Below, one piece after another: positions 3,217 to 45,334 of a stretch of DNA of 64,000 bases (position 1 is its first letter; the number at the start of each line of letters is the position of its first letter). The stretch covers positions 992,001-1,056,000 of the forward strand of contig SMSO01000036.1 in assembly GCA_004764695.1 (NCBI GenBank). The letters run 5' to 3'. This DNA comes from Schizochytrium sp. TIO01. Lineage: Eukaryota; Protista; Bigyra: Labyrinthulomycetes. The position numbers and the translations under genes were made by a program. The notes under the pieces were generated by a model. The model was not told the origin of the DNA, ran no database searches, and saw only the letters and a program-made list of their open reading frames with translations.

Positions 3217-4044
<828 letters not shown>

Positions 4045-5838
4045 TAAAAAGAGTTTAAAAAAATAAGAAAAAGAAGGTAAAAATCACAAAGGAAGGAAGG
4101 GCTCTTTCCAAAGGACCTCGAGCAGAATAGAACTACCTCAGCTCAGAACCAACCAATGAACAACGTCGAAGTCGAAGGCCCCACGCCCCCATTAAGAACC
4201 AACAAGACTCGACTTCGCCCAGCTCTTCATGCCAGAGCTTGCTAGTCTCCCGATAAATAAACACCTACTCTCGAGCAGCTGAGGTATCTTTAGCCCAAGT
4301 GCCCATTGATTGCACTGGTCTCTGCTTGCAAGGCGCAGGTATCAACGCCTCTGCCAATGCTCCAGCCCATGAACTAAGGACCATGGGACGGCTCAGTCGC
4401 GAAGAAGAGCGCTGAGCAGAGCCCCGGAAACGGCACGTGTTTCCAAGGGAGGAATTGAATGACAGACAGATTCCGAGGGGAATGTTGACTCTTGGATTCC
4501 TCCATTCTTTCGACCTCCCGACCTCGAGAGTTTGTTTCTGACGGGACAGAGGCTTCAAGCCATGAGCAAACGCGTGAACAAACAAGTCGAACCGTGCTCG
4601 ATAGTAAAAGCTCTCGTCGCGCGCGTCAAGCTCCATCTGCGGAGCGCTTGGGCTTCTTCTGCCCAAGAAGGAGATTGAGCGCATGCATGTGCTCGCCCCA
4701 TCGGCACCAGTTCCTTCGTTCAGTTTCTCCCATCTCTCTCCAAGACCTCAGCGTCGCAGATGCGTGGAGAGGAACCGTGGCGCAGGAACTTCGCCGCCGA
4801 GGCATAATAGCGGCGTCTGCGAACCCACAAACAGACCGGCAGAGGGGGCCTGGTCCGCCTCGCTTCGAGAGGACCAGCGCAGTGCTGTGCATTGAGCTCT
4901 ATAGTGAATATGAACTGTTTCCAAGAACCAGAGCTGATTGAAAGAAAGAAAGAAAGAAAGCAAAAGCGCTCACTCCCTTACTTACTTACTTACTTACTGA
5001 GGCGTCGAAAGCGAGTGAGTGGTCCGGCCTGAAAGTCCTGGAGAGAGATGGGCTGCGAGGGTGGGCACGTGTCTACGAAATGCCTTTGGATCATCGTTGA
5101 TTGCCTCTTGCTTGGGGAGGGAGGGAGTGAGTGCGTGCGTGCTTATTCTTTGAGAGTTGGAGGACCGGAAGGGATGCGTCTTTTTCGTTTCTTTCTCTTC
5201 TTATTATTGATTGTAAAAACAGCCAATTACTTTGAAAGAAATTATGATTATCATTATAGTTGTAACTAAATTAGACAGGTAAGTAAATGAACAGAGTAGG
5301 ATTCTAACGAAAATGTTACAACTTCAAGTTGGAACTTGGATAAAACTAATAAATTGAAAACGCTCTTCTTTCTTTCTTTTTCCATTTTTTTTTTAATATT
5401 TTTTTTTAAGTTTTATTTTTTAAGTTCTACTTTCCAAAAGTGATATTTTCTAAAAGCGAGTGGGTACCTAGATGCCTTCTAGCTTTTACTATACAGGTGG
5501 TACTCATCAGCATCACTAGTGGGGAACTACAAGCAACAGTGGTCCGGGCCCGCGTACAGACTTAGTTTTGAAGAAATTACCAAGAACCGCCAAGAAGGAT
5601 CTTTGCAAACCCATATTGCGGAGTTGCTCGTGCGGCTGCCTGATTGGGTACCCTTCGGCGCATAGACACGGAGGTGAACCAGAGCAGCTACACCAAAGGA
5701 ATTGTGCTGCTAGACACACGCCTGATTTTAGCTTTTGCAAACACGACTCTGTCCGAGTTTGAGTAGTCTGTCAACGAGGGGTCCACGCCACGCAAAGAGG
5801 ACGAGCGAGACCTTGACGTTGAACATCAGTGCATAACA

Positions 5839-7000
5839 ATGGCCGATGAGCAAAATGGCGACAGCGTGGTTTTAGAAGAAGAGATTGACCCAGATTATAC
5901 ACCAACGATTGACGAGCAGATTGACTATGGACAATGGCTGGGTATGAGCTTTCCCGAAGATGATGACCTACTCTGGATTGCTCGCGAAGGACTCAAAGCA
6001 CCGCTGCCAGAACATTGGAAACCGTGTCGCACCCTTGACACCGGTGAAATCGTAAGTTGATCAAATGAAGCAAAATGAATGAATAGCCTCGGGGGGCGAC
6101 TTTGCGTATTTGTCATCGAGCTTGTTCCTTGTTCTAGCTTGGTTTGAGGAATGTTTGAAAGACTAACTTTTGGCTGTGGAATTATACTGTCTTGATCGCT
6201 GGGGTTAATTGTGAACGTGTTACTTTTTTATTTATTTTGGGTGCATGTTTGTGTCAACTTTGTGATCATTTCTGAACGCATTAACATTTTGATAGTACTA
6301 CTTTTCTTTTGCTGATGGCCAATCAAGTTGGGACCACCCGTGCGACTCTTTCTACCGCAACCTATATCAAGAGGAGAAAAGAAACCGGAACCTTCGTTCC
6401 AGATCCCAAAACAATCATAGGTTGAACAGCGATACCGGAAGTGAAGAACAATCGGAAACCTCCAGCTCAAGTGAGGAAGACGAAGCGTCAACTACCCCTT
6501 TCGTTTCCCTTTCCCAAGTAAATGAAAATGGAAGCGAGGAATCCACCATCAGTCAACAGCGCACGGCAGCTCCAGTCACTCAAGCAGAAGATTACTTGAG
6601 TTCACCACAATCCGATTTGTCTGGGAACGCACGAAACTCACTCACTGCCAACCAAAACACAGAGGAGGTTTCTTCTGTTGACCCCGGACACCTCGATGAT
6701 GGTGTGACTCACGCAAAAACTGTCACTGTAGCCACGACTCTTGACGAAATTGCCCAAGCAGAAGTTACATATGCTGTACCAAAGCAGCAGCAACATGCTA
6801 TTTTCGATCTTGAAAAGCAGCAAATTGAGACCGCCCGAGCCTTCCACTTGATGAAGAATGTGGACGACAAAGATGATAAAGGTTATGCACGCCCTCTTCA
6901 CCGCGCAAACTCGAGGCTCCAACATTACCTTTACGTTTTGGCATTTTTGGCCTTAGTTCTCTTTCTCTGCATTAATTATCATCGTTGCATTGAAATCTAA
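5839..7000 (+). CDS. Truncated CEP164 paralog: N-terminal WW module, disordered linker and C-terminal transmembrane helix; exons 5839-6051 and 6296-7000, ~305 aa
   Basis: Exon 1 (VLEEEIDPDYTPT..EQIDYGQWLGM....DDDLLWIAREGLKAPLPEHWKPC) is the CEP164 N-terminal signature. The GTAAGT...TTAAC...TAG intron (6052-6295) splices in frame to YYFSFADGQSSWDHPCD, which completes the WW domain and continues into ORF 6422-7000. That ORF ends in hydrophobic YLYVLAFLALVLFLCI. Confidence 0.85.
5850..6363 (+). repeat. Copy 1 of a 514-bp direct repeat (copy 2 at 9892-10405, offset 4042)
   Basis: By eye only 4 mismatches (5893, 5932, 6218, 6230) across exon 1, the intron and the start of exon 2. Confidence 0.95.
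6052..6295 (+). other. Spliceosomal intron (244 nt, phase 0) splitting the WW domain
   Basis: GTAAGT donor, TTAAC branch-like motif at 6281 and TAG acceptor; removing it restores the WW domain. Confidence 0.9.
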
Positions 7001-9880
7001 ACCATACAAGTCATACTTTTCACAATCTAAACTAGTTATTTGACAAACTTCTGAACCTTGGTTGCATCGCTAGTTCTCTATTGAGGTGGGTCCAAATTTG
7101 AGTCTCCTGGATTATAATTTCTCTTCTTGACTTCCAAATCTTTCATAACTCTTGTTGAAGTTTTGAAGGGGGGGAAATTGTAATCTGAATATCCTCGGGC
7201 TAGGCATGGACTTGTTTTCTTTTCTTTTCCAGGCACCAAAGAAACTCACCTCTTTGAGGATGATGAATCATCTTCCAACTGTGCCTTGCAGGCTGCCTAA
7301 TTTAAATCTAATTCCACGGCTCACCAAAGATTCTCGAGGTTCATCCAGTTACATTCATTTGAGAACCCAGGCTAGTACAATTTATCTAGTGACCAAATCA
7401 TTCTTTTTACCCAATATATAACGGTGCATTATTAGACCTTCTTCATCATGATCTCGAGGCGATAATTATTTAGATTAAAACTCGTTACCTGCTCGATATA
7501 CTCAAAACTTCTCGGTTCCAGAGGCTTTTGTGCGACAATGTGAAAAACATAGTCGAGCAGGTTTTAATTACACAAATTGTCCTGTACACTGCCTGTTTAT
7601 GGCAAACCTACTGAATTTTGAAACACAGTCAATTCTATCGACATCAAGCACCTAGTATATACCATCACTCTTGCTCTTTGCAATGTCACCGAACATCATA
7701 TGTAGTATTAAAGAAAGAAGAAGAAGGAGAAGAAGAGGTGCCAGCAATTTACAATGATTTGATAGGTTCTTGAGAAGAAAAGGATGCGTCAGAATGTGCC
7801 ATCTTTCCAGTTTCTTTTCTAAAGAGAAAGGTGAAACGACGTCTAAAGGTTAATTTGGAAAAAAGAAGAAAAGACAAAAAGGTGACTTTGAAGACCTGTT
7901 TCTGTATCCCAGTCCCATCTTTCATGGAATCATCCTTTCTGCAGGATTACAAGCACAGCGAGAATATGACTCAAGAGAAATGTTGGACTTCCAGCTGATT
8001 GCCTGCCAGCCCTAAATGAGATCAAGGGCTCTCTGCACCACTAACCAAGAGAATTCACTATCAACTTAGGAGTTCCCTCACACTTAGAACGCAGAAATGA
8101 AACCCTTTTTGTAGCATACGTTCCTACTCTGAAAGATCATTTGAAGTAGTGGACAGGGAAGTGAAGTGAAAGACCTGTCCAGCAGCAGCGCACTTTACTG
8201 TTATCTTAGACCTACTCGAAACCATCCTACCACTCGGCCTAACAGTCTTCTTCCTGAGCGATGAAAACGTTGAAAACTCGAGCTTCTTGATGTAAAGCTT
8301 TCATTTGCGAACTCAAATATGCCCACATATTCGGAGTTCCACGAAGTCCACGAAGTGGAGTCGCAGCTTCAAGCAGGGAGCAAACGGCCCACGGAAAAGG
8401 TGGGTTTGCACACAAACAATCGGCGCACGGCCCTCGTGTCGCACCACCTACTACCACCACTACCTAATTCGGTCTTCGACACCACTAACGAAAATGAAAA
8501 TGCCAACGAATTTGATTGATTGTGATTGTGATTAGTTGCGATGAATTGAACGAAGGAAGTAAGGATTGAATGAGCTTGCTTACTCGAACTAGTGATTGCG
8601 AATGAGGGAATGAGTGAATGCATTGGCAAGTAAGTGCCCAAGTGCTCTGGCTTTGAAAGACACGCTTCGGCCTTTTATGTTTAATGCTAAACTTTCTTGG
8701 TTTTGATATCTCCTTATCTTGCTAAAAGTAAGTTTTTAACTCAAAAAAACCAAAACAAAAAAGAAAAAGAAGAAAGAATGAGCCCCAAAATAACAAAGTA
8801 TAGAATGAACATTGAATTAAAAAAACATACATAGTACTGTTACTTGTAATGATTATACCCGCCCATTTTTCATCAAAAGAATGGCAATCGCTTCAAGAAG
8901 GCATGGAGAAGAAGCCCTCGATAGCTTTTCTAGACAACGTTCACTCAGCCAAGGCGTCAAGAGAAGCAGAGGGCTGTGCTGTAGCGCGACCTCCACGCTC
9001 GCATCGGCGCTATGTTGCTGGTTTGATCGGTCGTTGCTGAGTTTGATTTGGCGTGCGCGTTTCATTATTTTCTTCTTATTCTGCATTAGTTTCGTGTGGT
9101 CTTTCATTCTGAAATATTATGCCTTTTTGCATACAGGAATACTAAGACTCGTGCAAAGAAGATATAGCAAATGTAGGCTATTAGGGTACTCCGTAGGGGC
9201 TCTTAGGTGGCATGGGAAAGAGTTAACATATTTTCCTCGATTGATGCAATCTCATCCAATTCTACTTCGACGTCTCGAGGAGCACGTCCGCTGCTAGGTG
9301 AGGCAGGACACTACAAACCGCGAGGGCAGCGGCGAGCTCCCGTAGGAAGGTCTTGCCTGCGATTTCCACACAAGCAAAGGGCTTGCGTGGTGGAAGAAAG
9401 ACCAAGGACGGGCTGTTTAGAAACAGCGACTCGTTGAATCGTTCAAAGGAGCCCCAAGGCAAAATACAATACTCACCACGCAAAACTACTTGCACAGAAT
9501 AATATAGACCTAGCTCTCTGTAGGGCTGAGGTCCAGTTGAAACCTCGCGGAGCTCGCTAAATAACAGTTTGAAGATCGTGCTGTGAACACAAAGTGAGCC
9601 TTGTTTTCAGTCTTTTCTTTCGTTGAAGAACGCCTTCTTTTGGATGCTAAGACGGTGACTTCGTTCACAGGGTTTGCCGAGCTCAAGGCTGTCCGAGCTT
9701 ATCGTTACATTGCTTTCTTTGAAGACGTAAAGCTAATACTGTCAAGCCTGCCCTGGCTGCGATCAAACCATCAAGTGGGGTTTCGTGTTTGGGGACGCAA
9801 ACATTAACTGGTTCGTTGGCCACGTCGTTGAGGAAGTCTTTTCGTATAACTTGAAAACCTAGGATAAAGGCGTCAGCATC

Positions 9881-12800
9881 ATGGCTGCTGCGCAAAATGG
9901 CGACAGCGTGGTTTTAGAAGAAGAGATTGACCCAAATTATACACCAACGATTGACGAGCAGATTGACTATGGAAAATGGCTGGGTATGAGCTTTCCCGAA
10001 GATGATGACCTACTCTGGATTGCTCGCGAAGGACTCAAAGCACCGCTGCCAGAACATTGGAAACCGTGTCGCACCCTTGACACCGGTGAAATCGTAAGTT
10101 GATCAAATGAAGCAAAATGAATGAATAGCCTCGGGGGGCGACTTTGCGTATTTGTCATCGAGCTTGTTCCTTGTTCTAGCTTGGTTTGAGGAATGTTTGA
10201 AAGACTAACTTTTGGCTGTGGAATTATACTGTCTTGATCGCTGGGGTTAATTGTGAACGCGTTACTTTTTTTTTTATTTTGGGTGCATGTTTGTGTCAAC
10301 TTTGTGATCATTTCTGAACGCATTAACATTTTGATAGTACTACTTTTCTTTTGCTGATGGCCAATCAAGTTGGGACCACCCGTGCGACTCTTTCTACCGC
10401 AACCTCTATGAAGAGGAAAAAAAGCGACGGAACCTCAGTAAACAAAACGGGCTGTCCCAGGATAGTTCAAAACGTCACGAATCCGAAAGTGATGATGTGC
10501 GCAGAATCATTGATATGCAGAAGCGCGAAGGAGCTATTGACACGTCTGTACAAAACAAACTCGGCAAAACACGTGGCAAAACTCCACACGATCTCAACGC
10601 TCACAGGCCTGGCCATTCTAATGACATGGGGATGGGATCTGGCGCAGCGCTCAACAAGAAGGCAGTGCTACCGAAAATCAAACGCTCTCCCTTGGAAACG
10701 AACATGCCATCATCAAGATCTGATGTGGAGTCAAATGATGAACAGTCTGAAAAGTCCAGTCCCCGGGCAGGCTCATCGTTGCTCGGGTCGGCACACTCAG
10801 ATCTTTCTGATCAGCGCATGAAGCGAACATCAGTAGCATCCGAAAGAGGATCACAATTGACAGAGGATCGTCGTCGTAAAGGTCGCCGCGGTGACTCAGT
10901 TATTGTAGATGATGGTAACAACTATAGCAACATGAATCGACGCCGCGCGAATGGACACCGCTTCGAAGCCAACAGTCACGTCAGTAGTGGCGAGGAGGAT
11001 GACGAGGATGATGAGGATGAAGATGGTGAGAAAGATGAAGTGATGGGCAATGGGCACGGCCACGGCAGAGACTACAACATGGGATATGGTCGTGACTACC
11101 GGTCTTCGAAAGAACCAGCTTATATGCCAATGCAAAACCGCGGGGAACAAAAACAAGAACATGTAAACGGGGGGCTCTCTAATATTCATGCTGAGAATGA
11201 GCGGAAATTACAGGAAGCTCAAGATGTCTTTGATCAAAGCTTGGAAAACTTACGATTGCGCCTTGCTGATGAGAAAGTAATTCAAGAAGAAGAGCATGAG
11301 CAGCACATTCAACAACTTCAGGATGATTTTAGTAAATTCCAACGCCAAATCAAGCGAGCCCAAGATGACGCTCATCAAAAACACGACGAAGAATTAGCGC
11401 GATTACAAGACGAGTTAGAAAAATTCAATCAACAATACCTGGACAAAAAAGAAGAACTTCAAGAAAATCACAAGAATCTTATGCAAGAGCAAGAAGAAGA
11501 GCTTTCTCGAATTCAACAAAAGTTCAATCAAAAGAAAAACACACTCGATCAGCTTAGAAGAGATGTGGAAGCCTTGGAAGAGCAGTACGATAGGCTTACT
11601 GATATAGGGGATCTTCAACAGCAGTTGCAAGAAATAACCGACAAGGAGGAGTCAAGTCAACAACTTCTGCGAAAGGAGCGAGAGCATCGGGAGCGCATGG
11701 TGTCACAAATTGATGACTTTGAGCGAGAAAAATCAGAACTCATAGCGTCATTCGAGCGTGAACGTTTACAGATTGAGGAGGACTATAGGATTCAGCTGGA
11801 GGCCCAATCAAAACAGCTTGATGAGAAGGGTATCTCTAGTGAAGGGTCTAACTCTCTTACCCCTTCTCAACCATCTCGTGATCCAAACGACGTGGCGGAA
11901 TTAGCATCAAAACAAGAACTGATTGCTGAGTTGCAGAGCCAGCTTCAAGATGTCCGGCAAGCCCTGGAGGCGTCAAGATTGGAAAGCAAAGACATTAGCC
12001 ATACATTGGCAAATGAACGCCTTAAGTTTGAAAACCTTGAAAGTTCACATCAAACACAAGTTCGGGAAATTAGACAAATACAAGCAAACTGCGAAGAATG
12101 GGAAGAAAAATACAATAAGGCTGTGGCATCCTTGCTCGCTTTTCAAGAAGACCAAACACAGTCTGGGAAAACTCTAGATGACGAGGTGACGAAGGCGGGT
12201 AGGCAAACTGAAGCTGCCCTTGAGCGAGCGCGTATTGCCGAGGAGCAACATTCAAGCCAGGCGTTGGCGCATCGCACAGAACGTGAACGGTTGCAGGAAT
12301 GCCTCTCTAAAGCTCAAACCGACGCCAAAGCTTTGGAGAGTCGAGTAGAGGCCCTTGAGCTTACCCTTATCTGAAACAGAAACTGAGGCAAGGCAGTCAA
12401 ACACTGAAAAACGAAAGCTTCAATCGTTACTTGACACTGCACATGAGAAATGTGCAAATGTAGAAAATAGGTGTAAGACGCTTGAGTCTTTGCTTGAGGC
12501 ATCGCGCTCAGAAAATGATCAGAACGAGGTTTCCCAGAATGCACTTGGAAGACTAGAAATGGAATTAAATGAGGCTCGTACTGATTTGATGAACGAGCGA
12601 TCGAAGGCACGTTCTGAACAAAATGCTTTAGAAGAAAACATCGAAGATCTGAAGGCAGAGCTACAAAAAGCAAGGGACCGGGAGATCTCCCTTGATGCAG
12701 AAACAAAGAAGAAAGTGTTCGATCTTCAGGAGAAATTGACTACAGCAGAAACACTTAGCGCAACGTTGAATCAGGAAATTTGTGTTCTTGAGGAAAGGAA

Positions 12801-15339
12801 TGCCGCTTCTCTGGCAGAAGTGCAGCAGGGCGTCGATGCAGAATCCCGCAAGCTCGAAAGTGCTCTTGAAGATGCCGAGGCTGCTCGCGAACAAGCTGAG
12901 GCCGCTCGCGAACAAGCTGAGACTGCTCGCCAACAAGCTGAAGCTTCTTGCAAACAAGCAGAAGTTGCTCGCGAACAAGCTGAAAATGACTTAAAAGAAC
13001 TCGAGCAAGACTTAGAGAATACCACTACGATGCTGAATCAGGAAATCGAATCTCTGCGGGTGCAGTTACTTAGTGCAGCGCATACAACATCTGGCGAAAA
13101 GGGCGATCAAGAAAACCGCCTTGCGCGTCTTTTGCAGGACCTGCATGAAGCAAATATGCAACTTGAGTCAACTGAGGCTCGCCATGCTGAAGATCTCGAG
13201 AATTGGCGGCAGGAGCAAGCACGGTTACGCGAGGATCTCTCAAACAGGGATGAAGATTTAGCTGTGCAGTTGAGAACTGCGCTCCGTGAAGCTACGGAAT
13301 TGCGAGAAGAGAGGGGAAGTCTGAAGCGTAATTTGGAGTCAACAAGGGAAGATGTCGCAAACCACAAAGCGAAGGTTGAGAGCTTACGTGCAGAGTTGCA
13401 TGGAGCGTTGGAGGATGCGCGTGCTTCGAGAGACGAACGAGACCAACTCCGCCAAGAGACTGAAAGACTCAGACGCGAATCTGCGCAGGCAGAGCATGAT
13501 TCTTCGCAACAACATGAACTGTCGTCAATGCAGCGCTCTTTGTATGCACTTCAGGCACAACAGCGTAAACTCGAAGCTGAGCGTAAACAGGCTCAGGAAA
13601 ATGAAGAAGTTGCAATTCAGGATGCCGAGAGCATCAGTCAAGAACTTGCACGAACTAACAAGCAGCTTCTCGAAGAACAACGTCGTGCTGCGACTTTGGA
13701 GCGAGCCCAGCGCCAATTCAGTAATCGTGAAGCATTCTTAAATTCTCGTGTGTCAGATCTGGAAATCGAGTTGGAGGACTTACATAACAAGGCCGACACT
13801 CAGGAAGAGAAAGTTCGTAAATTAAGCGACAGGTGCAATAAGCTTGAAAAGGAACGCAGTATTGTCATTACAGAACGCGACAGACTTCTCGAACAGAATA
13901 AGGAGTTGGAAGATTCTCTTTCCGCATTAAGCATGACCAAGTCAACCTCTAGTGATATGGAGCGTCGTCAGCGAAAACTAGACGTTGAGCGACAACAGCT
14001 GGATGAAGAACGCCGGGCTATGGATAAGGAAAAACGCAAGATTGATGAGCGAGCAAAGGCAGTTAAACAGCAACTCCTACGCATTGAAGAGCGTATCCGT
14101 CGGGAAGGGAAATTCAATAGTGAGAATGATATGTCAGAGGTAAATGCGGCTTCCTTTTCTCGAATGGGAGGGCGTATTTCCACTCCAAATAAAGAAGAGG
14201 TCCTTGCTTCCGCAACATATTGGAATGATGGTGCCGAGGAAGAGCGAAAGGCCTTTGATGCAGCACGCGACATCCTTCATACCCAACATCGAGAGCTCGA
14301 AGATCAACGTACTCGACTGGGCAAGCAACAGGATACGTGGCGGGAAACCGAGGGACGCTCTTCATTTGCAATCAGCAAGGTTGGCAGCATTCTAGAGCTT
14401 CAAGAGGATGAGTTGACAGAAACGTTGCGCGAGCTCTCGCAAAAGCTAGAGTGGCTTCAAACTGTATCGGAACTGCACGAGAAGGTTTCCAAGAGTGCCA
14501 TGGCGCTACTCGAGCACCCAAGTGATTCCGATCTTCGTGCAAACTTTCTGCAGAACCTTGATGAGTACCGTGCAGAACAATTTTTTGTGGAAGACCAGGA
14601 TCGTGGCGATGAGGGAAATTTGTATGGTGTAGCTGATGAAAATGAGTCTTTATTTGGCAACTCTAACCAGCACGACCGCTATGCATCGTTCGGCCCCTCT
14701 CATCGAATGAATAACAATTCGCGACTAGGGGGGGCAGCCATGAACGTGCCTCCTCCCCCAGTCCCACCTGGGCCTGCAAGCTATGCTTACCCTGTATACC
14801 CGGCACACACAATGCCTTTGCAGCCGATGTTCATGCCTGCGCGGCACCCGACTGGATCAACTGTGGTTTTTGTAAATGAGAATGGCCAAATCTTGCAAGA
14901 GTCGACTATTCAACCTGTCATGCATGTGCCTCGGTCTCGGGCTTTCCGTGGCTCAGGGAATAACCATGTAGAGAATGGTTACAACAGAATGGAGGCTATG
15001 CAAGGTTACGGGCTCGGGCCTGAGACTTCTCCAGTGCCAAGTGCACCATTACACGAAGTTTCTATGTTGCCTGAGGAGGTGCGATTGATGGAATCGCGAT
15101 GGAATGAACAGCAAGCCTTTGCACAAGAGCACTCTCAATGGCTGATGAATTTCCGCAGAGACCTTGAGCGTGTTTCATCCGTGCCCTCTGTAGTCTCTGC
15201 CTCGAGCTCGTCTTCGAGACGCGGAACGCTTAAATCCGAGCACCGGCGCTCACGTATTGTGCCACCCAAACGCGCCCGACAACGTACACGACGAGATCTC
15301 CCACGCACATATATACCAGATTTTGAAACAAAGATTTAG
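9881..15339 (+). CDS. CEP164: Centrosomal protein CEP164-like (WW plus long coiled coil); exons 9881-10093 and 10338-15339 with a +1 frame break at ~12365; ~1737 aa if corrected
   Basis: Same CEP164 N-terminal/WW signature, with the intron at 10094-10337. Exon 2 is in frame with ORF 10497-12374. Coiled-coil E/Q/L/R/K composition continues seamlessly into the overlapping ORF 12355-15339. Confidence 0.85.
9892..10405 (+). repeat. Copy 2 of the 514-bp direct repeat
   Basis: Near-identical to 5850-6363. Confidence 0.95.
10094..10337 (+). other. Spliceosomal intron (244 nt, phase 0)
   Basis: GTAAGT...TTAAC...TAG; same position as the paralog's intron. Confidence 0.9.
12880..12984 (+). repeat. 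Coding 21-bp minisatellite x5 (AAREQAE heptads) in the CEP164 coiled coil
   Basis: Consensus GCTGCTCGCGAACAAGCTGAR; five degenerate copies. Confidence 0.9.
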
Positions 15340-44191: not shown

Positions 44192-45334
44192 ATGGCAAAC
44201 ATGAGGCGCCTGAAGCTTGAGCTTTTCCTCACTGTCTGCCTGTGCCTATTGACATTTGTTGAATCTCGTCCACATGCTACTACACATTTGCGCTCGAGGT
44301 CACGAACACTAAGTAGCACAAGCAACTCCATCCCGAGTGAATATGCATCAGATGATGAAGTGCCTGAAAAGGCATATGACGATAGTGATGAAGATCTTGA
44401 CGATGATGTAGAGATTACATACTACAACGACGATGGAGTTATAACAATTGCTGAACCAACCAGCGACATCGAGCCTCGCGGCGATGGATACACGAGTGAA
44501 GATAACGATGGAACTGTTACTATTGAAGATGGCGAACCCACGGACGACATCGAGCCTCGTGGCGACGGATCCACCACTGACGACGATGATGATGATGATG
44601 GGGTCGTGACTATTGCTGATGGAACAATCGAAATCGATCCCCCTGTCGAGGACTACTCATCTGATGATGAAGACCATCCTGTAACAGATAGGAAAATGCC
44701 TGTAGAAGCAAGCGAAGACGACGATGGACTCGTCACCATTACTGATGGAACAATTGAAATCGATCCCCCTGTCGAGGACTACTCATCTGATGATGAAGAC
44801 CAACCCGTAACAGACAGACAGACAAGCGAAGACGACGATGGACTCGTCACCATTACTGATGGAACAATCGAAATCGATCCTCCTGTCGAGGACTACTCAT
44901 CTGATGATGAAGACCAACCCGTAACAGACAGACAGACAAGCGAAGACGACGATGGGCTCGTCACCATTACTGATGGAACAATCGACATCGATCCCCCTGT
45001 CGAGGACTACTCATCTGATGATGAAGACCAACCCGTAACAGACAGACAGACAAGCGAAGACGACGATGGGCTCGTCACCATTACTGATGGAACAATCGAC
45101 ATCGATCCCCCTGTCGAGGACTACTCATCTGATGATAAAGACCAACCCGTAACAGACAGACAGACAAGCGAAGACGACGATGGGCTCGTCACCATTACTG
45201 ATGGAACAATCGACATCGATCCTCCTGTCGAGGACTACTCATCTGATGATGAAGACCAACCCGTAACAGACAGACAGACAAGCGAAGACGACGATGGTGT
45301 TGTCACAATCGCAAATGATGAATACGACGACGAC

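What the first reader, a model, noticed from the sequence alone, without database searches (positions are those of the whole stretch)
5839..7000. A membrane-anchored 'mini-CEP164': the kinase-recruiting WW module fused to a tail anchor
Seen: a spliced ~305-aa gene 4 kb upstream of full-length CEP164 has the intact N-terminal/WW module, lacks the long coiled-coil region, and ends in a ~16-residue hydrophobic helix with a short tail (RLQHYLYVLAFLALVLFLCINYHRCIEI) and no signal peptide. Known: the CEP164 N-terminus recruits TTBK2 to centriolar distal appendages, the coiled coil gives centriole targeting, and CEP164 is normally soluble. Inference: this is a tail-anchored adaptor or decoy that redirects the WW ligand to a membrane (ciliary vesicle, ER or organelle), possibly a lineage-specific control on flagellum assembly. 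The ORF track misses it because it is split into 73-aa and 192-aa pieces.
Basis: partly seen in the sequence, partly recalled or inferred. Interest (0 to 1): 0.85.

Follow-up and report, generated by a model that had tools for sequence, protein, structure and literature searches.

The report
Expressed tail-anchored mini-CEP164 paralog
Next to its normal basal-body gene CEP164, this non-photosynthetic marine protist has a real, transcribed and correctly spliced 305-residue gene that keeps only CEP164's kinase-docking head and ends in a predicted membrane anchor, so it may hold that docking site on a membrane instead of the basal body, although this function is untested.

Summary
Exon 1 (5839-6051), a GT..AG intron (6052-6295) and exon 2 (6296-7000) encode 305 aa.

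- **Expression.** The 6051/6296 junction is present in all four runs laid. One 1163-nt contig joins the copy-specific 5' UTR to the copy-specific 3' end. An MMETSP transcript ORF (P0002, 305 aa) has exactly this structure.
- **N-terminal domain.** Residues ~5-105 are a complete CEP164 N-terminal domain: three-helix bundle plus WW, Foldseek TM 0.81 to PDB 7O0S, Pfam WW above cut-off.
- **The rest.** An acidic disordered ~115-aa linker, one helix, and a single C-terminal hydrophobic helix six to eight residues from the end. This part has no relative anywhere searched, yet shows normal codon usage in the correct frame only.
- **Origin.** The two paralogs are ~99% identical over 5851-6363, intron included, and unalignable outside. 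This fits gene conversion between older paralogs.

A tail-anchored topology is predicted, not shown. About 5% of arbitrary ORFs in the window end this hydrophobically, and the anchor is encoded by 47% T sequence. The decoy or membrane-adaptor function is an inference from the known dominant-negative effect of the CEP164 N-terminus. Verdict: a real gene and a new architectural variant of CEP164, with function untested.

The parts
5588..5838 (+). Copy-specific 5' UTR of the mini-CEP164 gene (5' end approximate; contigs start at 5573-5627)
   Evidence: RNA-type contigs start at 5573 (X14), 5588 (X6), 5618 (X13) and 5627 (X1) and run into exon 1. There is no similarity to the sequence upstream of copy B.
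5839..6051 (+). Exon 1: 71 codons, helices 1-2 of the CEP164 N-terminal bundle and the first half of the WW domain
   Evidence: phmmer to PDB 7NWJ/7O3B CEP164, E 7e-14. Matches residues 1-71 of transcript ORF P0002 apart from D19N and Q32K.
6052..6295 (+). Intron, 244 nt, GT..AG, splitting the WW domain
   Evidence: Joint 6051->6296 in 4 of 4 runs, far deeper than the intron-containing contig. The human CEP164 alignment is contiguous across it.
6296..7000 (+). Exon 2: 234 codons plus TAA stop
   Evidence: Translation is open from 6296 to the stop at 6998-7000. Contigs cover 6296-7023/7031.
6296..6393 (+). Second half of the WW domain and helix 3 of the bundle (end of the segment shared with copy B)
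   Evidence: phmmer to CEP164 residues 78-106, E 3.5e-7. Pfam WW 56-86 of P0002, 27.5 bits against a cut-off of 26.9. Foldseek 7o0s_B E 9e-11, TM 0.81, rmsd 2.1.
5851..6363 (+). Core of the homogenised (gene-conversion) tract, ~99% identical to 9893-10405, intron included
   Evidence: blastn 5839-6393 vs 9881-10435, 97.5%. The binned identity profile is ~0.4 outside and 0.97-1.0 inside, with differences clustered at both edges.
6440..6775 (+). Acidic Ser/Thr/Glu-rich linker, predicted disordered (protein residues ~120-231)
   Evidence: AlphaFold2 pLDDT below 50. Composition S22 T16 E16 D13 over the 167 copy-specific residues between the shared module and the hydrophobic tail, net charge -16. 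Codon usage is of coding type.
6782..6862 (+). Predicted helix (residues 234-260) before the anchor
   Evidence: AlphaFold2, pLDDT ~70-89.
6926..6973 (+). Core of the predicted transmembrane tail anchor, YLYVLAFLALVLFLCI (residues 282-297), followed by NYHRCIEI
   Evidence: Kyte-Doolittle 19-mer 2.21, the only segment at or above 1.6. Lies inside helix 272-304, pLDDT ~94. The 60 bases 6917-6976 that span this core are 47% T.
7001..7031 (+). Short 3' UTR; transcript contigs end at 7023-7031
   Evidence: Contigs end at 7023 (X13) and 7031 (X6); there is no depth beyond in X6, X13 or X14.
9881..15339 (+). Neighbouring full-length CEP164-type gene (copy B): exon 1 9881-10093, intron 10094-10337, then ~1670 codons of coiled coil and C-terminal region
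   Evidence: Translation; ORFs 10497-12374 and 12355-15339; colinear match of its C-terminal part to a 1976-aa homolog; RNA contigs on 9277-9823 and 10417 onward.

Best explanation
**What it is.** A real protein-coding gene, and a partial paralog of the adjacent CEP164-type gene.

**Shown:**
- It is transcribed from its own 5' region, spliced at 6051/6296, and ends about 25-30 nt after its stop.
- It encodes 305 aa.
- Residues ~5-105 form the complete CEP164 N-terminal domain (three-helix bundle with an inserted WW domain). Its protein sequence matches the neighbour's almost exactly.
- The rest is an orphan sequence with normal codon usage: an acidic disordered linker, one helix, and one C-terminal hydrophobic helix.

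**Inferred, origin.** The pair is older than its ~99% core identity suggests. Gene conversion keeps the selected N-terminal module, and the intron trapped between its two exons, identical. Everything outside has diverged beyond recognition.

**Inferred, mechanism.**
- The protein is inserted post-translationally as a tail-anchored protein. By its short, uncharged tail the ER is the most likely membrane.
- The CEP164 N-terminal domain then faces the cytosol on a long flexible acidic tether.
- That domain should bind the same proline-rich ligand as the basal-body CEP164, which in animals is the tail of the CK1-family kinase TTBK2.
- The protein would therefore compete with the basal body for the kinase (a sink or decoy), or place the kinase on a membrane.

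**My odds:** real expressed coding gene ~0.95; membrane-anchored ~0.6; competitor or relocaliser of the CEP164 ligand ~0.25-0.3.
For: **Gene and splice**
- the joint is present in 4 of 4 runs, and one contig runs from the specific 5' UTR to the specific 3' end.
- P0002, a 305-aa MMETSP transcript ORF, has this structure.
- The own genome holds only two places with this module, both carrying the intron, so the spliced form is RNA and not a retrocopy.

**N-terminal domain**
- Sequence and fold matches.
- Structural residues named in PMC8752127 (A56, P59, W62, H86, P87, R93) have identical counterparts A54, P57, W60, H85, P86, R92. Five of these six (A54, P57, W60, H85, P86) are invariant in a 36-sequence alignment; R92 is conserved here but is not on the invariant list.

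**Coding status of the orphan part**
- In-frame codon log-odds is 0.221 bits per codon.
- Known long ORFs score 0.252 +/- 0.123. The other five frames score -0.32 to -0.63. Intergenic windows score -0.40, with a maximum of -0.18.
- The ORF is intact, with no indel in 6296-7000, in four runs from at least three organism labels and in P0001/P0002.

**Anchor**
-.

**Gene conversion**
-.
- In other strains copy A carries the copy-B base at 5893, 5932 and 6364.

**Depth**
- Copy-A-specific contigs have k-mer depth equal to or above copy-B-specific ones in three of four runs. This is a poor measure of expression.

**Precedent for competition**
- Overexpressed WW-containing N-terminal CEP164 is dominant negative for ciliogenesis, probably by competing for TTBK2 (PMC8752127, read).
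Against: - No experiment or dedicated predictor supports membrane insertion.
- 4.5-5.3% of arbitrary stop-to-stop ORFs in the window end with an equally hydrophobic 19-mer. The anchor is encoded by 47% T sequence, against 20% T in the rest of the specific region. Its last 34 codons score -0.07 in the codon test. The helix could therefore be a chance by-product of T-rich 3' sequence.
- No ortholog of residues 105-305 was found in the own genome, in metagenome contigs, in 1.84 billion representatives (only the top 150 were listed) or in the ESM Atlas. Long-term constraint is unmeasured.
- Within-species changes in the specific part are 3 non-synonymous to 2 synonymous, which is uninformative.
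- The ligand was not identified in this genome.
- All runs are contigs of unknown culture stage, so nothing links expression to flagellated stages.
Confidence: 0.5

Rival explanations
1. A young chimeric gene with little or no function. A partial duplicate of the 5' end of CEP164 is transcribed and translated. Its C-terminal part, including the hydrophobic end, is evolutionary noise, and the T-rich sequence happens to read as a membrane-like helix.
For: - The specific part is an orphan.
- The anchor is encoded by 47% T DNA, and about 5% of arbitrary ORFs end alike.
- T-rich non-genic sequence is known to yield TM-like peptides (PMC7005711).
- pN:pS is 3:2.
- Most of the specific part is predicted disordered.
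Against: - Codon usage of 6395-6997 is typical of genuine genes, and only in the used frame.
- About 200 codons stay open in all strains seen.
- The gene has its own 5' UTR and 3' end, and depth comparable to or above the parent gene.
- The sharp-edged identity block that starts at the ATG is hard to explain by a recent random 545-bp duplication landing in frame between a promoter and an open frame. It fits old paralogs with conversion.
Confidence: 0.25
2. A functional but soluble, non-membrane CEP164 N-terminal-domain protein. The C-terminal hydrophobic helix would serve for oligomerisation, for binding another protein, or as a degradation signal. The protein would act as a cytosolic regulator or competitor of the CEP164 ligand.
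For: - Short proteins carrying only the CEP164 N-terminal domain, without any TM segment, are listed in other lineages. Examples are a 201-aa Pythium oligandrum protein and a 239-aa Trypanosoma conorhini protein.
- The soluble N-terminal fragment is dominant negative in animal cells (PMC8752127).
Against: - A 16-residue stretch made only of Y, L, V, A, F, C and I, eight residues from the end, with no other hydrophobic segment and no signal peptide, is the textbook tail-anchor signature.
- Such a segment exposed in the cytosol would normally be captured by the tail-anchor insertion or quality-control machinery (general knowledge, not tested here).
Confidence: 0.15
3. Assembly artefact or collapsed duplicate: the upstream copy does not exist as such in the genome.
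For: The two copies are nearly identical over ~510 bp, a situation in which assemblers can err.
Against: - Independent data sets carry the copy-specific flanks joined to the shared core. These include the X13 contig 5618-7023 (spliced), the X1 contig 6296-8360, and the X6 and X14 contigs.
- A 1501-nt JGI contig carries both the 73-aa and the 192-aa ORF, and an MMETSP transcript matches.
Confidence: 0.02

Closest known systems
CEP164 (human; N-terminal domain structures 7NWJ, 7O06, 7O0S, and the TTBK2 complex 7O3B)
   Same: Complete N-terminal domain: a three-helix bundle with an inserted WW domain, 45-49% identical over 88-97 aligned columns, TM 0.81-0.84. The bundle/WW linker residues and the R93 equivalent are conserved.
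   Different: It lacks the ~1300-residue coiled-coil and C-terminal region that puts CEP164 on distal appendages. Instead it has an orphan acidic linker and a predicted C-terminal membrane helix.
Experimental CEP164 N-terminal fragments used as dominant negatives (Schmidt 2012; Cajanek & Nigg 2014, as cited in PMC8752127)
   Same: A WW-containing N-terminus detached from the centriole-targeting part. It is expected to compete for the same ligand.
   Different: This one is a natural, genomically encoded gene with its own promoter region, and it carries a predicted membrane anchor. Competition has not been tested.
Multiple CEP164 paralogs in protists (Trypanosoma brucei CEP164A/B/C, PMC11190437)
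   Same: Lineage-specific duplication of CEP164, with paralogs able to take distinct regulatory roles. CEP164C is part of a flagellum-length lock.
   Different: All three trypanosome paralogs localise to transition fibres. No transmembrane segment is mentioned in that paper (zero occurrences of 'transmembrane'). The paralog here lacks the coiled-coil and C-terminal region that gives animal CEP164 its centriole targeting.
Other database proteins with CEP164-type N-terminal modules in unusual architectures (P0012, P0143; P0004, P0005, P0006, P0008, P0153)
   Same: - P0012 (389 aa) has two such modules, a short coiled coil and a C-terminal hydrophobic helix five residues from the end.
- P0143 has one module followed by several hydrophobic segments.
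- P0004, P0005, P0006, P0008 and P0153 carry 2-3 modules in tandem.
   Different: There is no similarity outside the module. P0012 is a singleton with no family of its own. These look like independent inventions or unchecked gene models, not one family.
Tail-anchored proteins (Sec61beta, cytochrome b5, SNAREs; GET/TRC40 clients)
   Same: No signal peptide, a cytosolic N-terminal domain, and a single hydrophobic helix within 30 residues of the C-terminus.
   Different: This is an operational class, not a homologous family. Insertion and target membrane are untested here.

Membership tests
CEP164 family | N-terminal domain homologous to CEP164(1-109): WW domain inserted in a three-helix bundle | tested here: met
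   phmmer E 7e-14 (exon 1) and 3.5e-7 (exon 2), contiguous. Pfam WW 27.5 bits, above the 26.9 cut-off. AF2 model pLDDT above 90, Foldseek 7o0s_B E 9e-11, TM 0.81, rmsd 2.1.
CEP164 family | Conserved linker and core residues needed for a stable WW/bundle unit (human A56, P59, W62, H86, P87, R93; PMC8752127) | tested here: met
   The counterparts A54, P57, W60, H85, P86 and R92 are present. The first five are invariant in a 36-sequence alignment.
CEP164 family | Long coiled coil and C-terminal region that target the protein to distal appendages or transition fibres | tested here: not met
   The protein ends at residue 305. Residues 105-305 show no similarity to copy B, and AF2 shows a disordered linker plus two helices. 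It is therefore a partial paralog carrying the N-terminal domain, not a full CEP164.
CEP164 family | Binds the proline-rich tail of TTBK2 or an ortholog | not tested
The WW aromatic residues are conserved.
CEP164 family | Localises to the basal body or centriole distal end | not testable with these tools
   Needs tagging and microscopy.
Tail-anchored membrane proteins | Single hydrophobic helix within ~30 residues of the C-terminus | tested here: met
   Kyte-Doolittle 19-mer 2.21 at residues 279-297 of 305. It lies in helix 272-304 with pLDDT ~94. Chance baseline is ~5% of arbitrary ORF ends. No dedicated TM predictor was available.
Tail-anchored membrane proteins | No signal peptide and no other membrane segment | tested here: met
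   No other 19-mer reaches 1.6 (the next best in exon 2 is 0.75). The N-terminus MADEQNGDSVVLEEE is acidic.
Tail-anchored membrane proteins | Post-translational insertion and membrane residence | not testable with these tools
   Needs fractionation or imaging of an N-terminally tagged protein.
Partial-duplicate pseudogene | Disrupted frame or no transcription | tested here: not met
   The frame is open across 305 codons in the reference and in all strains seen. The gene is transcribed and spliced, and its codon usage is of coding type.

The most novel reading that the evidence does not exclude
A natural, membrane-tethered decoy for the ciliogenesis kinase. In non-flagellated vegetative cells, the tail-anchored CEP164 head would hold the TTBK-type kinase on the ER or another membrane, away from the basal body. 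Its down-regulation or removal would then license flagellum assembly when zoospores form. Gene conversion with the neighbouring CEP164 would keep the decoy's binding surface matched to the real docking site.
Probability: 0.15. Interest if true: 0.75.

Novelty: new variant of a known kind. Interest (0 to 1): 0.5.

Why it matters
Recruitment of TTBK2 by the CEP164 N-terminal domain is one of the earliest switches of cilium assembly. In animal cells the detached N-terminal fragment blocks that switch.

Here an organism encodes such a detached fragment itself. It expresses the fragment at a level comparable to the full gene, keeps its binding module identical to the real one, and apparently fixes it to a membrane.

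If functional, it would be a genetically tractable natural regulator of where the kinase-docking site sits. It would also be a clear example of gene conversion keeping a decoy or adaptor matched to its parent.

If not functional, it is still a clean case of a chimeric gene: an old domain joined to orphan coding sequence with a possibly de novo membrane helix.

Tried and rejected
- **Exon-wise Pfam scans** found nothing because the intron splits the WW domain. The whole-protein scan was done on the database transcript ORF P0002. All whole-protein analyses used P0002, which differs from the window's product at three residues (D19N, Q32K, one I->V).
- **Relatives of the specific C-terminal part:** none in the own genome, metagenome contigs, the ESM Atlas or copy B. 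Only its own cluster turned up in the protein searches. The HMMER list shows only the best 150 of 3178 hits, all driven by the N-terminal domain, so weak C-terminal-only hits could be hidden.
- **A conserved family of tail-anchored CEP164-head proteins** was sought and not found. P0012 is a singleton. P0185 and P0183 look like doubtful gene models.
- **pN/pS from strain differences:** 3:2 in the specific part, too few to use.
- **Depth as expression:** reported only as a rough comparison, since all runs are contigs.
- **Organism identity:** not established.
  - No silicon transporter and no chlorophyll a/b-binding protein is found in the genome, so it is not a diatom and probably not photosynthetic.
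  - The best matches to the N-terminal domain come from several unrelated groups, including stramenopiles, a haptophyte and a green alga.
  - My guess of a zoospore-forming heterotrophic stramenopile is unverified.
- **Complex prediction** was not used, because no ligand sequence was available.
- **Misassembly** was rejected.
Full report
**1. What is in the sequence**

Reading the DNA gives a GT at 6052 and an AG at 6294-6295.
- Exon 1 is 5839-6051: 71 codons, phase 0.
- Exon 2 is 6296-7000: 234 codons and a stop.
- Together they encode 305 aa.

Exon 1 aligns to human CEP164 in the solved N-terminal-domain structures (7NWJ, 7O06, 7O0S, 7O3B) over chain residues 13-75, E 7e-14. The first 29 residues of exon 2 align to chain residues 78-106, E 3.5e-7. 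The two residues left between them are accounted for by the last two residues of exon 1. The splice model is thus confirmed by homology alone.

Searches on the window were made exon by exon, by reference. Whole-protein analyses used a database protein (P0002, see section 2).

**2. It is expressed and spliced as predicted**

A protein search with exon 2 found one cluster. Its members are:
- a 192-aa and a 73-aa ORF, which the contig columns (same contig count and same 1501-nt longest contig) suggest lie on one JGI contig, i.e. the unspliced genomic form in another isolate;
- P0002, a 305-aa ORF from an MMETSP transcript.

P0002 reads MADEQ...TGEI|YYFSF...HRCIEI. This is exactly the spliced product, with three substitutions: D19N, Q32K and one I->V.

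Twenty-three public runs hold the stretch. Four runs from four studies were laid on 5450-11400.
- The joint 6051->6296 (244 nt skipped, GT..AG) is present in all four, at k-mer depth 223, 287, 7.8 and 105.
- The intron-containing contig has depth 43, 9.9, 0 and 17.
- The own genome has only two places with this sequence, both with the intron. The spliced form therefore comes from RNA, although the runs' labels are only guessed to be RNA.
- In run X13 a single 1163-nt contig covers 5618-6051 plus 6296-7023. It links the copy-specific 5' UTR through both exons to the copy-specific 3' end.
- Contigs stop at 7023-7031 in three runs, so the 3' UTR is only about 25-30 nt.
- Copy-A-specific contigs are as deep as, or deeper than, copy-B-specific ones in three of four runs: 168 vs 79, 144 vs 7, 7.8 vs 2-3, and 59 vs 75. 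Contig depth is a poor measure of expression.

**3. Anatomy of the protein**

- **WW domain.** Pfam finds WW at residues 56-86 of P0002, above the curated cut-off (27.5 vs 26.9 bits). It was invisible exon by exon because the intron splits it.
- **Model.** An AlphaFold2 model built with 35 homologs shows:
  - residues ~10-110 at pLDDT above 90;
  - residues 120-231 disordered;
  - a helix at 234-260;
  - a helix at 272-304 with pLDDT ~94.
- **Fold match.** Foldseek places the N-terminal part on CEP164(1-109): 7o0s_B, E 9e-11, TM 0.81, rmsd 2.1 A, 47% identity.
- **Key residues.** The paper on that structure (PMC8752127) singles out A56, P59, W62, H86, P87 and R93 for the stability of the WW/bundle unit. 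Their counterparts here are A54, P57, W60, H85, P86 and R92. All but R92 are invariant in my alignment.
- **Linker.** It is acidic and rich in Ser, Thr and Glu, with net charge -16 over 167 residues.
- **Hydrophobic tail.** The only hydrophobic segment is LQHYLYVLAFLALVLFLCI at residues 279-297, Kyte-Doolittle 2.21. It is followed by NYHRCIEI. The next best 19-mer in exon 2 scores 0.75.
- **N-terminus.** It is acidic, with no signal peptide.

By sequence criteria this is a tail-anchored topology, with the CEP164 head in the cytosol.

**4. The neighbour and the origin of the pair**

Copy B starts at 9881, 4042 bp downstream, with the same exon-intron structure. It continues through about 1670 codons of coiled coil. 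Its C-terminal region aligns colinearly with the end of a 1976-aa homolog. It is the full-length CEP164-type gene.

The two copies share only 5839-6393 / 9881-10435, at 97.5%. The identity profile is a step:
- about 0.4 (random) on both sides;
- 0.97-1.0 from 5851 to 6363, intron included;
- differences piled up in the first 12 and the last ~30 nt.

The block begins at the start codon and ends where the conserved N-terminal domain ends. Beyond it, the copy-A protein has no detectable similarity to copy B.

Consider a recent random duplication of 545 bp. It would have to start exactly at an ATG, behind a working promoter, and fuse in frame to 200 open codons with good codon usage. That is far less likely than old paralogs whose selected module is homogenised by gene conversion, with the intron carried along between two conserved exons.

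Three of the reference's A/B differences (5893, 5932, 6364) carry the copy-B base in copy A of other strains. This fits ongoing conversion, but also simple new mutations in the reference.

**5. Is the orphan part really coding?**

No relative of residues ~105-305 was found in any search:
- the own genome;
- JGI metagenome contigs;
- the ESM Atlas;
- the word-indexed protein search;
- the full HMMER scan, where 3178 hits all go through the N-terminal domain and only its own cluster matches 114-305. Only the best 150 were listed, so this blank is limited.

Strain differences give 3 non-synonymous and 2 synonymous changes in the specific part, which says nothing.

A codon-usage test does discriminate. 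The model was trained on the window's long ORFs, and 6395-6997 was scored:

| Sequence scored | Bits per codon |
|---|---|
| 6395-6997, used frame | +0.221 |
| Same-length windows of real genes | 0.252 +/- 0.123 |
| The other five frames | -0.32 to -0.63 |
| Intergenic windows | -0.40 (maximum -0.18) |

The training set included one spurious ORF across the AAT repeat, a minor contamination. The frame is open, with no indel, in every strain seen. I conclude that it is a genuine coding region, not a fresh read-through into non-coding DNA.

**6. How much weight does the anchor carry?**

Less than it looks.
- In this window, 4.5-5.3% of arbitrary stop-to-stop ORFs of 60 aa or more end with a 19-mer as hydrophobic.
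- The anchor is encoded by 47% T DNA, against 20% T in the rest of the specific part.
- Its last 34 codons score -0.07 in the codon test.
- T-rich sequence is a known source of de novo membrane-like helices (PMC7005711).

The helix is real and sits in the position of a tail anchor. Whether it was selected as one is open.

**7. Mechanism**

Shown: an expressed protein with a complete, conserved CEP164 N-terminal domain, no appendage-targeting part, and a C-terminal hydrophobic helix.

From the literature:
- This domain recruits TTBK2 through a proline-rich motif.
- The detached WW-containing N-terminus is dominant negative for ciliogenesis, probably by competing for TTBK2 (PMC8752127).

Inferred:
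- The protein is tail-anchored. The ER is my own inference for the target membrane, from the short hydrophobic core and the uncharged tail.
- It presents the docking domain on a long acidic tether.
- It thereby withholds the kinase from the basal body, or relocates it.

The Ser/Thr/acidic linker would itself be a plausible substrate for a CK1-type kinase; this is also inference. The ligand was not identified in this genome and no binding prediction was run.

**8. Comparison with what is known**

Lineage-specific CEP164 paralogs exist. Trypanosoma brucei CEP164A/B/C are one case, and all three sit at transition fibres (PMC11190437).

Short N-terminal-domain-only proteins and proteins with two or three tandem modules appear in several protist data sets.
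- One singleton, P0012, combines two modules with a C-terminal hydrophobic helix.
- It shares nothing else with this gene and has no family of its own.

Full-text searches combining CEP164, TTBK2, WW domain, distal appendage and tail-anchored listed no paper describing a membrane-anchored CEP164-type protein.

I file this gene as a partial paralog of CEP164 with a new architecture. It is not a full CEP164, because the coiled-coil targeting part was tested for and is absent.

**9. Context**

The genome is 64 Mb in 37 contigs. It has no silicon transporter and no chlorophyll a/b-binding proteins. The organism is therefore not a diatom and is probably heterotrophic. Its identity was not established. 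Whether the runs come from flagellated or non-flagellated stages is unknown.

**10. Verdict**

- The gene is real and expressed.
- The tail-anchor topology is a sound prediction with modest statistical weight.
- The decoy/adaptor function is a good, testable hypothesis without direct support.
- Interest is moderate: a natural counterpart of a laboratory dominant-negative construct, kept matched to its parent by gene conversion, in an organism where it can be tested.

Noticed in passing
window 3226-4045: An almost pure (AAT)n microsatellite of about 820 bp, with GC 0.00 over 3300-3899. It produces a spurious 305-aa ORF on the minus strand.
   Followed up: partly
window 12340-12380: The full-length CEP164-type gene changes reading frame here: ORF 10338-12371 versus ORF 12349-15336. 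A 40-nt GT..AG interval (12340-12379) would restore the frame, but it is far shorter than the gene's other intron. A tiny intron, an assembly indel or a real frameshift are all possible.
   Followed up: partly
window 9277-9880: RNA-type contigs cover about 600 nt upstream of the copy-B start codon (X6 9277-9823, X1 9162-9811). This suggests a long 5' UTR or an upstream transcript for the full-length gene.
   Followed up: no
window 7000-8360: In run X1 only (organism label A), one contig runs on from exon 2 through the intergenic region to 8360 at the same depth. A loose end sits at 7212. This could be read-through, an overlapping antisense transcript, DNA in the library or a structural difference. 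The other three runs stop at about 7031.
   Followed up: no
P0004, P0005, P0006, P0008, P0153 (database proteins): Proteins from other protists carry two or three tandem CEP164-type N-terminal/WW modules in one chain. P0004 has three nearly identical repeats of ~155 aa. Module multiplication seems recurrent in this family.
   Followed up: partly
window 44588-45297: Tandem direct repeats with a ~114-bp offset, 89-95% identical (self-BLAST). They lie inside the stretch another first-stage note describes as an Asp-rich repeat in a trypsin-like gene.
   Followed up: no
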